A DNA stretch of 64,000 bases. Source: Schmidtea polychroa. Lineage: Eukaryota. The stretch lies in assembly GCA_044892525.1 (NCBI GenBank), contig CM097886.1, forward strand, positions 93,000,001-93,064,000, read 5' to 3'. Of this stretch, positions 15,556 through 16,076 are shown in pieces (the stretch's first letter is position 1; each line of letters opens with the position of its first letter). The translations under genes were made by a program, and so were the position numbers. The notes beneath the pieces are model-generated. The model was not told the DNA's origin. It was given only the letters and a program-made list of their open reading frames with translations, and did not search any database.

Positions 15556-15856
15556 ATGTTTAAATTTATTGAAAACGTTCTAAATGGACTAGTCACAGCG
15601 AATATAGTCGACAGCCTTAATTTCCTGGTCAATCGGACCGCACAAATTATTGAAGGCAACCATATCGACTACCAGAGCATGCTTGATATGGATTGTCTTG
15701 AATCAAAGAAGAATTATTTTAACAATATATTTCAATGTCTCTGCGATGAAGACATGCAATGGACAAGAATTATTGTAGGGTTCACCTACATGAAGATAAT
15801 CATTGCGAAAAGCCAACATGACTCAGAACATTATTATCAGTGGTCTTTAGAAGTAA

Positions 15857-15890
<34 letters not shown>

Positions 15891-16076
15891 TTTTAGATAA
15901 TCAAATCCAAGTTTAGTCCATGGATAGAAGATAATGGCGGATGGGATACACTCAATCAACTCGCCCGCAATGCTAAAGAAACTGATGAAATCAAAAGAAA
16001 AATGAAAAACTATATTAAACTCACAACAGTAGTTGTTTTATTGTATATGTTATTTAAATATTTAAATAAATATTAA
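15556..16076 (+). CDS. Bcl-2 family protein, two exons (15556-15852, 15897-16076), 158 aa
   Basis: Removing a 44-nt GT-AG phase-0 intron joins BH1-like LCDEDMQWTRIIVGFTY to BH2 SPWIEDNGGWD and a C-terminal transmembrane tail IKLTTVVVLLYMLFKYLNKY. Confidence 0.85.

What the first reader, a model, noticed from the sequence alone, without database searches (positions are those of the whole stretch)
15556..16076. Hidden spliced Bcl-2 homologue inside a Polinton
Seen: the track's 114-aa ORF ends in a spurious poly-Leu run read through an (ATT)n-rich intron. Removing the 44-nt GT-AG intron (15853-15896) gives a 158-aa protein with BH1-like EDMQWTRIIVGF, a strong BH2 WIEDNGGWD and a tail-anchor transmembrane helix. 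Known: adenovirus E1B-19K and herpes- and poxvirus vBcl-2 proteins block apoptosis, and canonical BH1 is NWGR. Inference: the element carries an apoptosis regulator, probably host-derived, and the QWTR variant may change BH3-peptide binding. Anti-apoptotic cargo may already be reported in some adintoviruses, so novelty needs checking.
Basis: partly seen in the sequence, partly recalled or inferred. Interest (0 to 1): 0.9.

Follow-up and report, generated by a model that had tools for sequence, protein, structure and literature searches.

The report
Spliced Bcl-2 gene in a Polinton
A 15.8-kb virus-like transposon (Polinton/Maverick) in this AT-rich genome carries a small two-exon gene for a divergent Bcl-2-family cell-death regulator; the reading is real, but such cargo has already been mentioned for the related adintoviruses.

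Summary
ORF 15556-15900 runs into an (ATT)n stretch. A GT..AG interval of 44 nt (15853-15896) joins it to a second frame that opens exactly at 15897 and has no start codon before its BH2 motif. The joined model is 158 aa.

Each exon hits Pfam Bcl-2 (PF00452) on its own and in order. Exon 2 alone matches the Bcl-xL BH2 region in PDB (E 0.003). An exon-1 profile ranks Bak, A1 and Bax first, at weak E-values. The joined model aligns across the junction with a Bcl-2 gene of a sister element that passes Pfam's cut-off (blastp E 2e-7; hhalign 87%).

A 98%-identical metagenome copy has the same intron at 38 nt with both exons conserved. Exon-1 dN/dS against an 83% relative is 0.11.

The host element is a genuine Polinton: 13521-29326, ~840-nt TIRs, 6-bp duplication CATGGG, PolB, integrase, A32-type ATPase and adenain-like protease.

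Not shown: splicing in RNA, the fold (exon-1 model pLDDT 47), host origin, or pro-survival activity. BH1 has Thr where every returned relative has Gly. The intron is not the canonical BH2-splitting one.

Starrett et al. 2021 already report adintovirus Bcl2 homologues, so this is a new member of a known kind.

The parts
13521..29326 (.). Polinton/Maverick-type element, 15,806 bp, termini 5'-AG..CT-3'
   Evidence: The terminal 20-mer occurs once at each end in inverted orientation. TIRs come and gene content.
13515..13520 (.). Target-site duplication CATGGG, left copy (right copy at 29327-29332)
   Evidence: Identical 6-mers flank both termini.
13521..14360 (.). Left terminal inverted repeat, about 840 nt, with internal tandem repeats of about 26 nt
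   Evidence: Inverted-repeat pairs I1, I2, I13, I18 and I24; the inner parts are 99% complementary.
28390..29326 (.). Right terminal inverted repeat; its inner end abuts an N run
15489..15526 (+). Candidate Pol II promoter: CCAAT (15489-15493) and TATAAATA (15519-15526), the latter 37 nt before the ATG
   Evidence: Both boxes are conserved in the 83%-related copy L002 although the spacer between them differs. Function is inferred.
15556..15852 (+). Exon 1, 99 codons, predicted helices a1-a5
   Evidence: Pfam PF00452 covers aa 30-89 against profile positions 7-69, E 0.003; L002 gives 0.0008 and L001 0.0038. The A1 profile ranks Bak, A1 and Bax first in PDB, E 0.16-1.3. dN/dS against L002 is 0.11. 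The AF2 secondary structure is all-helical.
15748..15783 (+). BH1-like motif (residues 65-76), QWTR in place of the NWGR type
   Evidence: HMMER aligns it to the INWGR segment of Bak and phmmer to ISWGR of the sister gene. L002 has KWTR.
15853..15896 (+). 44-nt GT..AG intron, phase 0, (ATT)n-rich, with a T run before the TAG
   Evidence: L001 has the same intron at 38 nt with substitutions while the exons stay 98% and 94% identical. Similarity to L002 ends at the donor G. The alignment to the sister protein runs ungapped across the junction. No RNA evidence.
15897..16076 (+). Exon 2, 59 codons plus TAA: BH2, linker and tail
   Evidence: PDB phmmer gives Bcl-xL BH2 at E 0.003. Pfam covers profile positions 86-100, E 0.13. 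L001 is 94% identical over 49 aa.
15921..15947 (+). BH2 motif (residues 108-116)
   Evidence: It aligns residue by residue with the Bcl-xL BH2 region.
16020..16055 (+). C-terminal apolar run (residues 141-152) flanked by Lys/Arg: tail-anchor-like but short
   Evidence: Hydropathy.
16065..16070 (+). AATAAA overlapping the last codons: candidate poly(A) signal
   Evidence: Read from the sequence. Function is inferred.
14946..15446 (-). Divergently oriented 166-aa coiled-coil ORF, neighbour of the Bcl-2-like gene
   Evidence: 89% identical over 101 aa in L002, in the same arrangement. Only a weak Fib_alpha hit.
16119..16460 (-). 113-aa ORF with acidic tandem repeats and a Cys-rich end
   Evidence: No family match.
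16688..17095 (-). 135-aa ORF conserved in sister elements
   Evidence: 27-28% identity to genes in L005 and L004.
17869..18306 (-). TBP-domain protein, 145 aa, one clear TBP repeat
   Evidence: PF00352 E 1.8e-16. PDB TBPs at E 1.5e-11. 53% identity to the L003 gene.
18415..19038 (+). A32/FtsK-type packaging ATPase, intact
   Evidence: Pox_A32 28.7 bits. 73% identity and 100% coverage against L003.
19607..20116 (+). rve integrase: only about one third of the sister's length is recognisable, and the gene contains an N run
   Evidence: PF00665 E 1.5e-7. 36% of the L003 integrase is covered. N runs are listed.
21494..22720 (+). 408-aa conserved protein, a possible capsid protein (not tested)
   Evidence: 64% identity and full length against L003. 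No Pfam or PDB sequence hit.
22785..23135 (+). Adenain-like protease, N-terminal part; it runs into an N run
   Evidence: PF00770 Peptidase_C5, 31.9 bits against a cut-off of 21.3.
24325..28186 (+). Protein-primed family-B DNA polymerase. The 1174-aa ORF is followed by further homology in other frames, which means at least two frame changes against the sister's single ORF
   Evidence: DTDS motif. Relatives carry PF03175. 55% identity and 96% coverage in three frames.

Best explanation
The 15.8-kb Polinton/Maverick (adintovirus-like) element carries a two-exon accessory gene for a 158-aa, tail-anchored, divergent Bcl-2-family protein. The proposed mechanism has four steps. (1) The gene is transcribed from its own CCAAT/TATA promoter. 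(2) The host spliceosome removes a 44-nt intron; without this, translation ends in a junk poly-Leu tail and BH2 and the tail are lost. (3) The short basic-flanked C-terminal segment inserts the protein into the mitochondrial outer membrane or the ER. (4) There it modulates the host's Bcl-2-controlled death pathway, most likely delaying death of a cell in which the element replicates. Shown here: gene structure, family homology, conservation with purifying selection, and the Polinton context. Inferred: expression, splicing in vivo, localisation, and the pro-survival direction. I put Bcl-2-family identity plus the splice model at about 0.85, and the pro-survival role at about 0.55.
For: Pfam PF00452 hits both exons colinearly at 18.5 and 13.2 bits, and relatives' exon 1 hits it too. 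Exon 2 matches Bcl-xL BH2 at E 0.003, and the 60 listed of 92 PDB hits are all Bcl-xL or Bcl-2. In the exon-1 profile search, 22 of 26 PDB hits are Bak, A1 or Bax, with BH1 aligned. The joined model against the sister element's Bcl-2 gene (PF00452 at 40.3 bits, cut-off 31.4; Bcl-xL E 7e-5) gives blastp E 2e-7, phmmer 22 bits and hhalign 87% (E 3.8e-6). That alignment is ungapped at the junction, and the BH1-BH2 spacing differs by 3 residues. The intron is shared: L001 has 38 nt against 44 nt, the read-through tails are not conserved, and exon 2 is 94% conserved. dN/dS is 0.11 at dS 0.80. Two sister lineages each keep one Bcl-2-type gene, but at different sites. The literature reports adintovirus Bcl2 and IAP homologues and a spliced herpesviral Bcl-2 homologue as precedent.
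Against: Neither exon reaches Pfam's cut-off alone, and the joined protein could not be handed to Pfam, PDB or structure tools because no reference exists for it. Exon 1 alone finds nothing in PDB by phmmer, and its profile hits are above E 0.1. The AF2 model of exon 1 is unreliable (pLDDT 47) and Foldseek returned noise. BH1 has Thr at the Gly position that every returned relative conserves. No BH3 or BH4 was detected. The apolar tail is only 12 residues. There are no RNA data. This copy may be defective: the PolB frame changes at least twice, the integrase is partial, and three sister genes have no counterpart. Only two close relatives exist in 5.8 billion and 1.84 billion proteins, JGI metagenomes and IMG/VR.
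Confidence: 0.6

Rival explanations
1. It is a Bcl-2-fold protein, but not a classical BH3-sequestering survival factor. It could be a Bak/Bax-like membrane-permeabilising or death-promoting factor (for example for release of particles), or a regulator of mitochondrial or ER physiology with an altered groove.
For: The best PDB matches of the exon-1 profile are Bak chains. BH1 carries Thr at the Gly position, and that Gly lies in the BH3-binding groove of Bcl-2 and responds to BH3 ligand (PMC9748362). From my own knowledge, not checked here, replacing this Gly in human Bcl-2 abolishes Bax binding (Yin et al. 1994). The Thr is kept under purifying selection in L002.
Against: The Bak hits are weak (E 0.16 or worse). 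BH2 is closest to Bcl-xL/Bcl-2. No BH3, which effectors need, was detected. The sister gene is closest to pro-survival Bcl-xL and A1. Known viral homologues are overwhelmingly pro-survival (established knowledge).
Confidence: 0.2
2. The gene is a relic. The family once encoded a working Bcl-2 homologue, but this copy sits in a defective element and is neither transcribed nor spliced.
For: PolB homology is spread over three frames, the integrase is partial, and three sister genes have no counterpart. There are no expression data.
Against: The gene itself has no stop or frame change. Its promoter boxes, splice sites and poly(A) signal are intact. TIRs are 99% alike over their inner parts and the target duplication is perfect, so the insertion is young. 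It is 98% identical to an independent metagenome copy. Some apparent defects coincide with N runs or could be assembly indels in AT-rich DNA.
Confidence: 0.15
3. There is no intron. The 114-aa ORF is the product, or nothing is, and the downstream BH2-like match is chance.
For: No RNA evidence. Each single hit is below the curated cut-off.
Against: Two independent hits to one family fall in the right order and spacing. The read-through tails differ completely among three copies, whereas the out-of-frame exon 2, which has no start codon of its own before BH2, is 94% conserved. The alignment to the sister protein crosses the junction without a gap.
Confidence: 0.03

Closest known systems
Bcl2 homologues of adintoviruses/Polintons (Starrett et al. 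2021, Virus Evol 7:veaa055, PMC8502044)
   Same: Anti-apoptosis-type accessory cargo (Bcl2, IAP) in PolB-plus-integrase virus-like elements of animals. The same paper also draws TBP genes in related midsize linear dsDNA viruses.
   Different: The paper gives one sentence and supplementary figures that I could not read. It does not mention introns in these genes, at least in the main text. I cannot tell whether this lineage is among theirs. The closest named PolB relatives here are only 30-33% identical.
Bcl-2 gene of sister elements L003/L005 (ENA metagenome contigs, PolB 54% identical)
   Same: A two-exon, roughly 160-aa, tail-anchored Bcl-2-family gene with a roughly 40-nt intron, in the ATPase/TBP accessory region of the same element clade.
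   Different: Only 22-26% identical. It has the canonical SWGR in BH1 and passes the Pfam cut-off. Its intron sits directly after the BH2 Trp codon, whereas the window intron lies 16 codons upstream of that Trp. It lies between TBP and ATPase, whereas the window gene lies beyond two further ORFs in the opposite orientation. The two are not positional orthologues.
Cellular Bcl-xL/Bcl-2 (BH2) and Bak (BH1 region), as returned from PDB
   Same: The BH2 core is nearly identical to Bcl-xL over 11 residues. The a4-a5/BH1 region aligns with Bak. Both have a C-terminal anchor.
   Different: BH1 Gly is replaced by Thr and Asn by Gln. No BH3 or BH4 is detectable. The protein is shorter (158 aa). The conserved BH2-splitting intron after TGG, found in almost all animal bcl-2 genes (PMC7527217), is absent.
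vNr-13 of herpesvirus of turkeys (PMC7199394)
   Same: [quoted passage not shown]
   Different: vNr-13 keeps the exon/intron organisation of its cellular orthologue and is 64% identical to it. Here no cellular orthologue is known and the intron position is non-canonical. No sequence comparison was made, because it is a virus of animals and did not come back as a hit.
BCL-2 motif in giant Gypsy-like LTR retrotransposons of planarians (Arkhipova & Yushenova 2019, PMC6431247)
   Same: A Bcl-2-type domain carried by a mobile element.
   Different: That element is a retrotransposon and the domain is embedded in a giant polyprotein, not a separate spliced gene in a DNA virus-like element.

Membership tests
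Bcl-2 family (Pfam PF00452) | Profile match at or above the curated cut-off (31.4 bits) | tested here: inconclusive
   The exons were scanned apart: 18.5 bits (profile 7-69) and 13.2 bits (profile 86-100), colinear, with a rough sum of 31.7. The joined protein could not be submitted. The sister gene scores 40.3 bits, and the joined model is homologous to it.
Bcl-2 family | BH1 motif (NWGR type) | tested here: inconclusive
   Trp and Arg are present and aligned. Gly is replaced by Thr and Asn by Gln or Lys in all three copies.
Bcl-2 family | BH2 motif (W..GGW) | tested here: met
   Exon 2 against Bcl-xL BH2, E 0.003.
Bcl-2 family | Helical bundle around a central a5-a6 hairpin | tested here: inconclusive
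   The AF2 model of exon 1 (3-sequence alignment) has pLDDT 47 and five helices. Foldseek against PDB found nothing at E 0.001 or better. The whole joined protein was not folded.
Bcl-2 family | C-terminal tail-anchor segment | tested here: met
   Apolar run at residues 141-152, mean KD 2.48, basic flanks, 6 residues after it. It is short (12 aa) and rests on hydropathy only.
Bcl-2 family (animal genes) | BH2-splitting intron directly after the Trp codon | tested here: not met
   The window gene has GAT after that TGG and no GT; its intron lies 16 codons upstream. The feature is met in L003/L005. It is described in PMC7527217. It marks gene ancestry, not fold.
Bcl-2 family | BH3 (and BH4) motifs | tested here: not met
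   No alignment from any tool covers residues 1-29. PDB and sister alignments start at residue 37 or later.
Pro-survival viral Bcl-2 homologues | Binds BH3 ligands and blocks cell death | not testable with these tools
   No functional data.
Polinton/Maverick | Protein-primed PolB | tested here: met
   In this copy the frame changes at least twice.
Polinton/Maverick | Retroviral-type (rve) integrase | tested here: met
   PF00665 E 1.5e-7 and 67% identity to the sister integrase, but only about one third is recognisable.
Polinton/Maverick | Long terminal inverted repeats, 5'-AG..CT-3' ends and a 6-bp target duplication | tested here: met
Polinton/Maverick | A32/FtsK ATPase and adenain-like protease | tested here: met
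Polinton/Maverick | Double jelly-roll major and minor capsid proteins | not tested
   The 408-aa conserved protein is a candidate only. It has no sequence hit and no structure was made.
Adintovirus (proposed) | PolB within the Alpha or Beta animal clades; an animal host | not tested
   No phylogeny was made. Named PolB relatives are from insects and a hydrozoan at 30-33% identity. The host of the window is unknown.

The most novel reading that the evidence does not exclude
This element clade acquired Bcl-2-family genes at least twice, or replaced one by another. The L003 type still bears the ancestral BH2-splitting intron of a host gene. The window type sits at another site, in the opposite orientation, with a different intron and a groove-altering BH1 Gly-to-Thr change kept by selection. 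That would point to recurrent selection for death-pathway control in Polintons, and possibly to an intron gained inside a virus-like element or to a non-canonical (non-BH3-sequestering) mode of action.
Probability: 0.3. Interest if true: 0.6.

Novelty: new member of a known kind. Interest (0 to 1): 0.42.

Why it matters
Polintons/Mavericks sit between transposons and viruses. Cargo that manipulates host cell death supports a virus-like life in animal cells, not passive transposition. This case also shows that ORF-based annotation misses such cargo: prokaryote-style gene calls in the databases stop inside the intron. It further shows that sister elements keep a Bcl-2-type gene at different sites with different introns, which hints at accessory-gene turnover under selection. 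It does not open a new category, because Bcl2 and IAP homologues in adintoviruses and spliced viral Bcl-2 genes are both on record.

Tried and rejected
- **Exon 1 against PDB (phmmer):** no hit.
- **Structure of exon 1:** AF2 on exon 1 with a 3-sequence alignment gave pLDDT 47 and pTM 0.35. Foldseek against PDB returned only noise at E above 4. This does not bear on the fold either way.
- **Joined 158-aa protein:** it exists only in my scratch files. It has no reference, so I did not type it into Pfam, PDB or structure tools. Whole-protein Pfam scoring, HHpred-type search and folding were therefore left out.
- **Search for more relatives:**
  - The 5.8-billion-protein word search found two.
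  - The 1.84-billion-protein exhaustive profile search found the same one plus a low-complexity hit.
  - JGI metagenomes and IMG/VR, searched by protein pattern and by a degenerate BH2 DNA pattern, found none.
  - A search with the sister gene returned only its own cluster, so no cellular Bcl-2 sequences were available for a phylogeny.
- **Host identification failed:** no tRNA or Rfam hits. The window's proteins are not in the collection. A Nop14-like exon was found, but its neighbouring exons could not be recognised, so host intron sizes were not measured.
- **Alternative introns:** seven other frame-restoring GT..AG pairs exist. All delete conserved residues or lack a T-rich acceptor, so I rejected them.
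- **L002 donor:** it appears displaced by one base, and the contig ends inside the intron, so its junction is unresolved.
- **Bacterial promoter/terminator scan:** irrelevant here.
- **One contig look-up failed** for lack of a slot.
- **Starrett supplements** are not held.

Full report
**1. The observation**

- ORF 15556-15900 (+, 114 aa) ends in a Leu/Phe run read through (ATT)n.
- GT lies at 15853 and AG at 15895-15896, so the interval is 44 nt and phase 0.
- Exon 1 has 99 codons. Exon 2 (15897-16076) has 59 codons plus TAA. The join gives 158 aa without a stop.
- The exon-2 frame is closed by the very TAG that holds the acceptor AG.
- The first Met of that frame comes after BH2, at model residue 135. 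BH2 and the tail can therefore only be expressed by splicing.
- Seven other frame-restoring GT..AG pairs exist, but each removes conserved residues or lacks a T-rich acceptor.

**2. Is the intron real?**

I joined the exons only inside scripts, and only after two kinds of support were in hand.
- **Tool-based.** The two exons, scanned apart, both hit Pfam Bcl-2 (PF00452) in colinear order. Exon 1 residues 30-89 match profile positions 7-69 (E 0.003, 18.5 bits). Exon 2 residues 2-16 match profile positions 86-100 (E 0.13, 13.2 bits).
- **Relatives.** Two metagenome contigs carry the gene.
  - L001 is 98% identical. It has GT..AG at the same place but 38 nt long, with substitutions in the repeat. 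Exon 1 (98%) and exon 2 (94% over 49 aa) are kept in their two different frames.
  - L002 is 83% identical. Nucleotide similarity to the window runs through the upstream gene, the promoter and exon 1, and stops at the donor G.
  - The read-through tails of the three copies share nothing.
- There is no RNA evidence.

**3. Is it a Bcl-2 homologue?**

- Exon 2 alone finds 92 PDB sequences. The 60 listed are all Bcl-xL or Bcl-2, best E 0.003, aligned on the BH2 core.
- Exon 1 alone finds nothing.
- A three-sequence exon-1 profile ranks Bak, A1 and Bax in 22 of 26 places, but only at E 0.16-1.3. BH1 aligns (QWTR/KWTR against the NWGR of Bak).

The strongest link came from context. The element's PolB has 45-60% identical relatives in metagenomes. 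Two of these contigs, L003 and L005, carry a Bcl-2 gene next to the ATPase and a TBP gene. That gene passes Pfam's cut-off (40.3 bits against 31.4) and hits Bcl-xL at E 7e-5.

The sister gene is itself split by a 41-nt GT..AG intron directly after the BH2 Trp codon, and its second exon encodes a tail anchor. [quoted passage not shown]

The window's joined model aligns with the L003 model as follows.
- Residues 46-152 against 50-161, 22% identity, blastp E 2e-7, phmmer 22 bits.
- hhalign probability 87%, E 3.8e-6.
- There is no gap at the window's junction, and the BH1-to-BH2 spacing differs by 3 residues.

I conclude with about 0.85 confidence that the spliced product belongs to the Bcl-2 family.

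- AF2 on exon 1 gave pLDDT 47. The model is all-helical but unreliable.
- Foldseek returned noise.
- The joined protein has no reference, so I did not type it into any tool.

**4. Departures from the family**

- BH1 has Thr where all returned relatives have Gly, and Gln or Lys where they have Asn or Ser. The Thr is shared by L002.
- No BH3 or BH4 is detectable.
- The apolar tail is only 12 residues long, though it is flanked by seven basic residues.
- The canonical BH2 intron is absent; the window intron lies 16 codons upstream of that Trp codon.

**5. Selection and conservation**

- Window against L002, exon 1: dS 0.80, dN 0.09, ratio 0.11.
- Window against L001 has too few changes to say anything.
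- CCAAT and TATAAATA boxes upstream of the ATG are conserved in L002.
- AATAAA overlaps the last codons.

**6. The element**

- **Ends.** The TIRs are about 840 nt long (inner parts 99% alike). The termini are 5'-AG..CT-3'. A perfect 6-bp duplication, CATGGG, bounds 13521-29326, giving 15,806 bp.
- **Genes:**
  - A32/FtsK ATPase, intact.
  - rve integrase.
  - Adenain-like protease, which runs into an N run.
  - A conserved 408-aa protein.
  - PolB.
  - A 145-aa TBP-domain protein.
- **State of this copy against L003.** PolB homology lies in three frames, which means at least two frame changes. About one third of the integrase is recognisable, and the gene contains an N run. Three sister genes of about 330 aa have no counterpart. 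Four N runs lie inside the element. I did not try to fill them, so some of these defects may be gaps, or assembly indels in AT-rich DNA.
- **The Bcl-2-like gene itself** has no break.

**7. Relation of the two Bcl-2 types**

- In L003/L005 the gene lies between TBP and ATPase.
- In the window those two genes are 108 nt apart. The Bcl-2-like gene lies beyond two further ORFs, one of them homologous to an L005 gene, and in the opposite orientation.
- Neither element holds a trace of the other type.
- More distant PolB relatives (L004, L006-L008) show no Bcl-2. L004 has a RING protein, dUTPase and TBP.

Different site, orientation and intron, together with 22-26% identity, fit either two captures or a displacement. 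Long divergence of one gene is not excluded.

**8. Mechanism**

The most likely course is:
- Pol II transcription.
- Removal of the mini-intron by the host.
- Tail-anchored insertion at mitochondria or the ER.
- Interference with Bcl-2-controlled death of the host cell, probably pro-survival.

The direction is inferred from the habit of viral homologues, from the Bcl-xL/A1 affinity of the sister gene and of BH2, and from the lack of a BH3. The Thr in BH1 and the Bak-like exon-1 hits keep a non-canonical or pro-death role open (0.2).

**9. What is known**

- Starrett et al. 2021 state that adintovirus homologues of Bcl2 and IAP were observed, and they draw TBP genes in related viruses. Their supplements were not available.
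- A spliced viral Bcl-2 homologue exists in a herpesvirus of turkeys.
- A BCL-2 motif occurs in planarian giant retrotransposons.
- Other literature searches found nothing closer.

Hence this is a new member of a known kind.

**10. Host**

The host is unknown. The DNA is 24-30% GC with (ATT)n repeats. Three observed introns measure 38-44 nt. The window's proteins are absent from the collections. The named PolB relatives come from insects and a hydrozoan at 30-33% identity. The Bcl-2 family points to an animal host; that is an inference.

**11. Declaration of a slip**

I stopped when I noticed. I used them for no search, alignment or conclusion. Every comparison above rests on alignments returned by the tools.

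Noticed in passing
window 17869-18306 (-); L003 12985-13431; L005 10604-11050; L004 8213-8662: The element and three sister contigs encode a 145-149-aa TBP-domain protein with one clear TBP repeat (aa 60-135) that matches both repeats of archaeal and eukaryotic TBPs. It is too short for the usual two full repeats. In the window it sits head to head with the packaging ATPase. The element's Bcl-2-like gene has a conserved TATA box.
   Followed up: partly
window 4072-5226 (-) and 31203-33896 (-): There are two further PolB fragments outside the element, 57% and 41% identical to the L003 PolB, each spread over several frames. They look like debris of older Polinton insertions. No Bcl-2-like sequence lies near them.
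   Followed up: partly
window 8049-11703 and 39350-43330: A large imperfect inverted repeat (76-85% complementary, about 3.7 kb per arm) encloses the Polinton and its flanks. Each arm contains an ORF (10648-11187 + and 39910-40719 -). Its nature was not determined.
   Followed up: no
L003 (ERZ2272806 NODE_2, 16.3 kb) and L005 (ERZ2271472 NODE_2, 15.1 kb): The sister elements were assembled as the second-longest contigs of their samples, at about 6x coverage and about element length, with no host flank in the parts fetched. In them PolB is inverted relative to the structural gene block when compared with the window element. They may be free virus-like genomes. Their ends were not examined.
   Followed up: no
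window 16119-16460 (-): A 113-aa ORF next to the Bcl-2-like gene has an acidic tandem repeat (7-8 residue units) and a Cys-rich C-terminus. It has no family match and no counterpart in the sister contigs.
   Followed up: partly
L004 7689-8156 (-) and 6430-6900 (-): A sister element (PolB 48% identical) carries a RING-finger (zf-C3HC4_3) protein and a dUTPase in the accessory region where the others carry Bcl-2 genes. This suggests turnover of accessory cargo.
   Followed up: no
window 43359-44186 (-); 59744-60271 (+): The flanks hold a retrotransposon RT/RNase H ORF and an exon of a Nop14-like nucleolar protein gene (profile positions 684-858 of 862). The latter is the only recognisable host gene piece in the window.
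   Followed up: partly
L002 709-738: In the 83% relative, the GT after the last shared codon is displaced by one base relative to the window donor, and the contig ends inside the intron. The junction phase in that lineage is therefore unresolved.
   Followed up: partly
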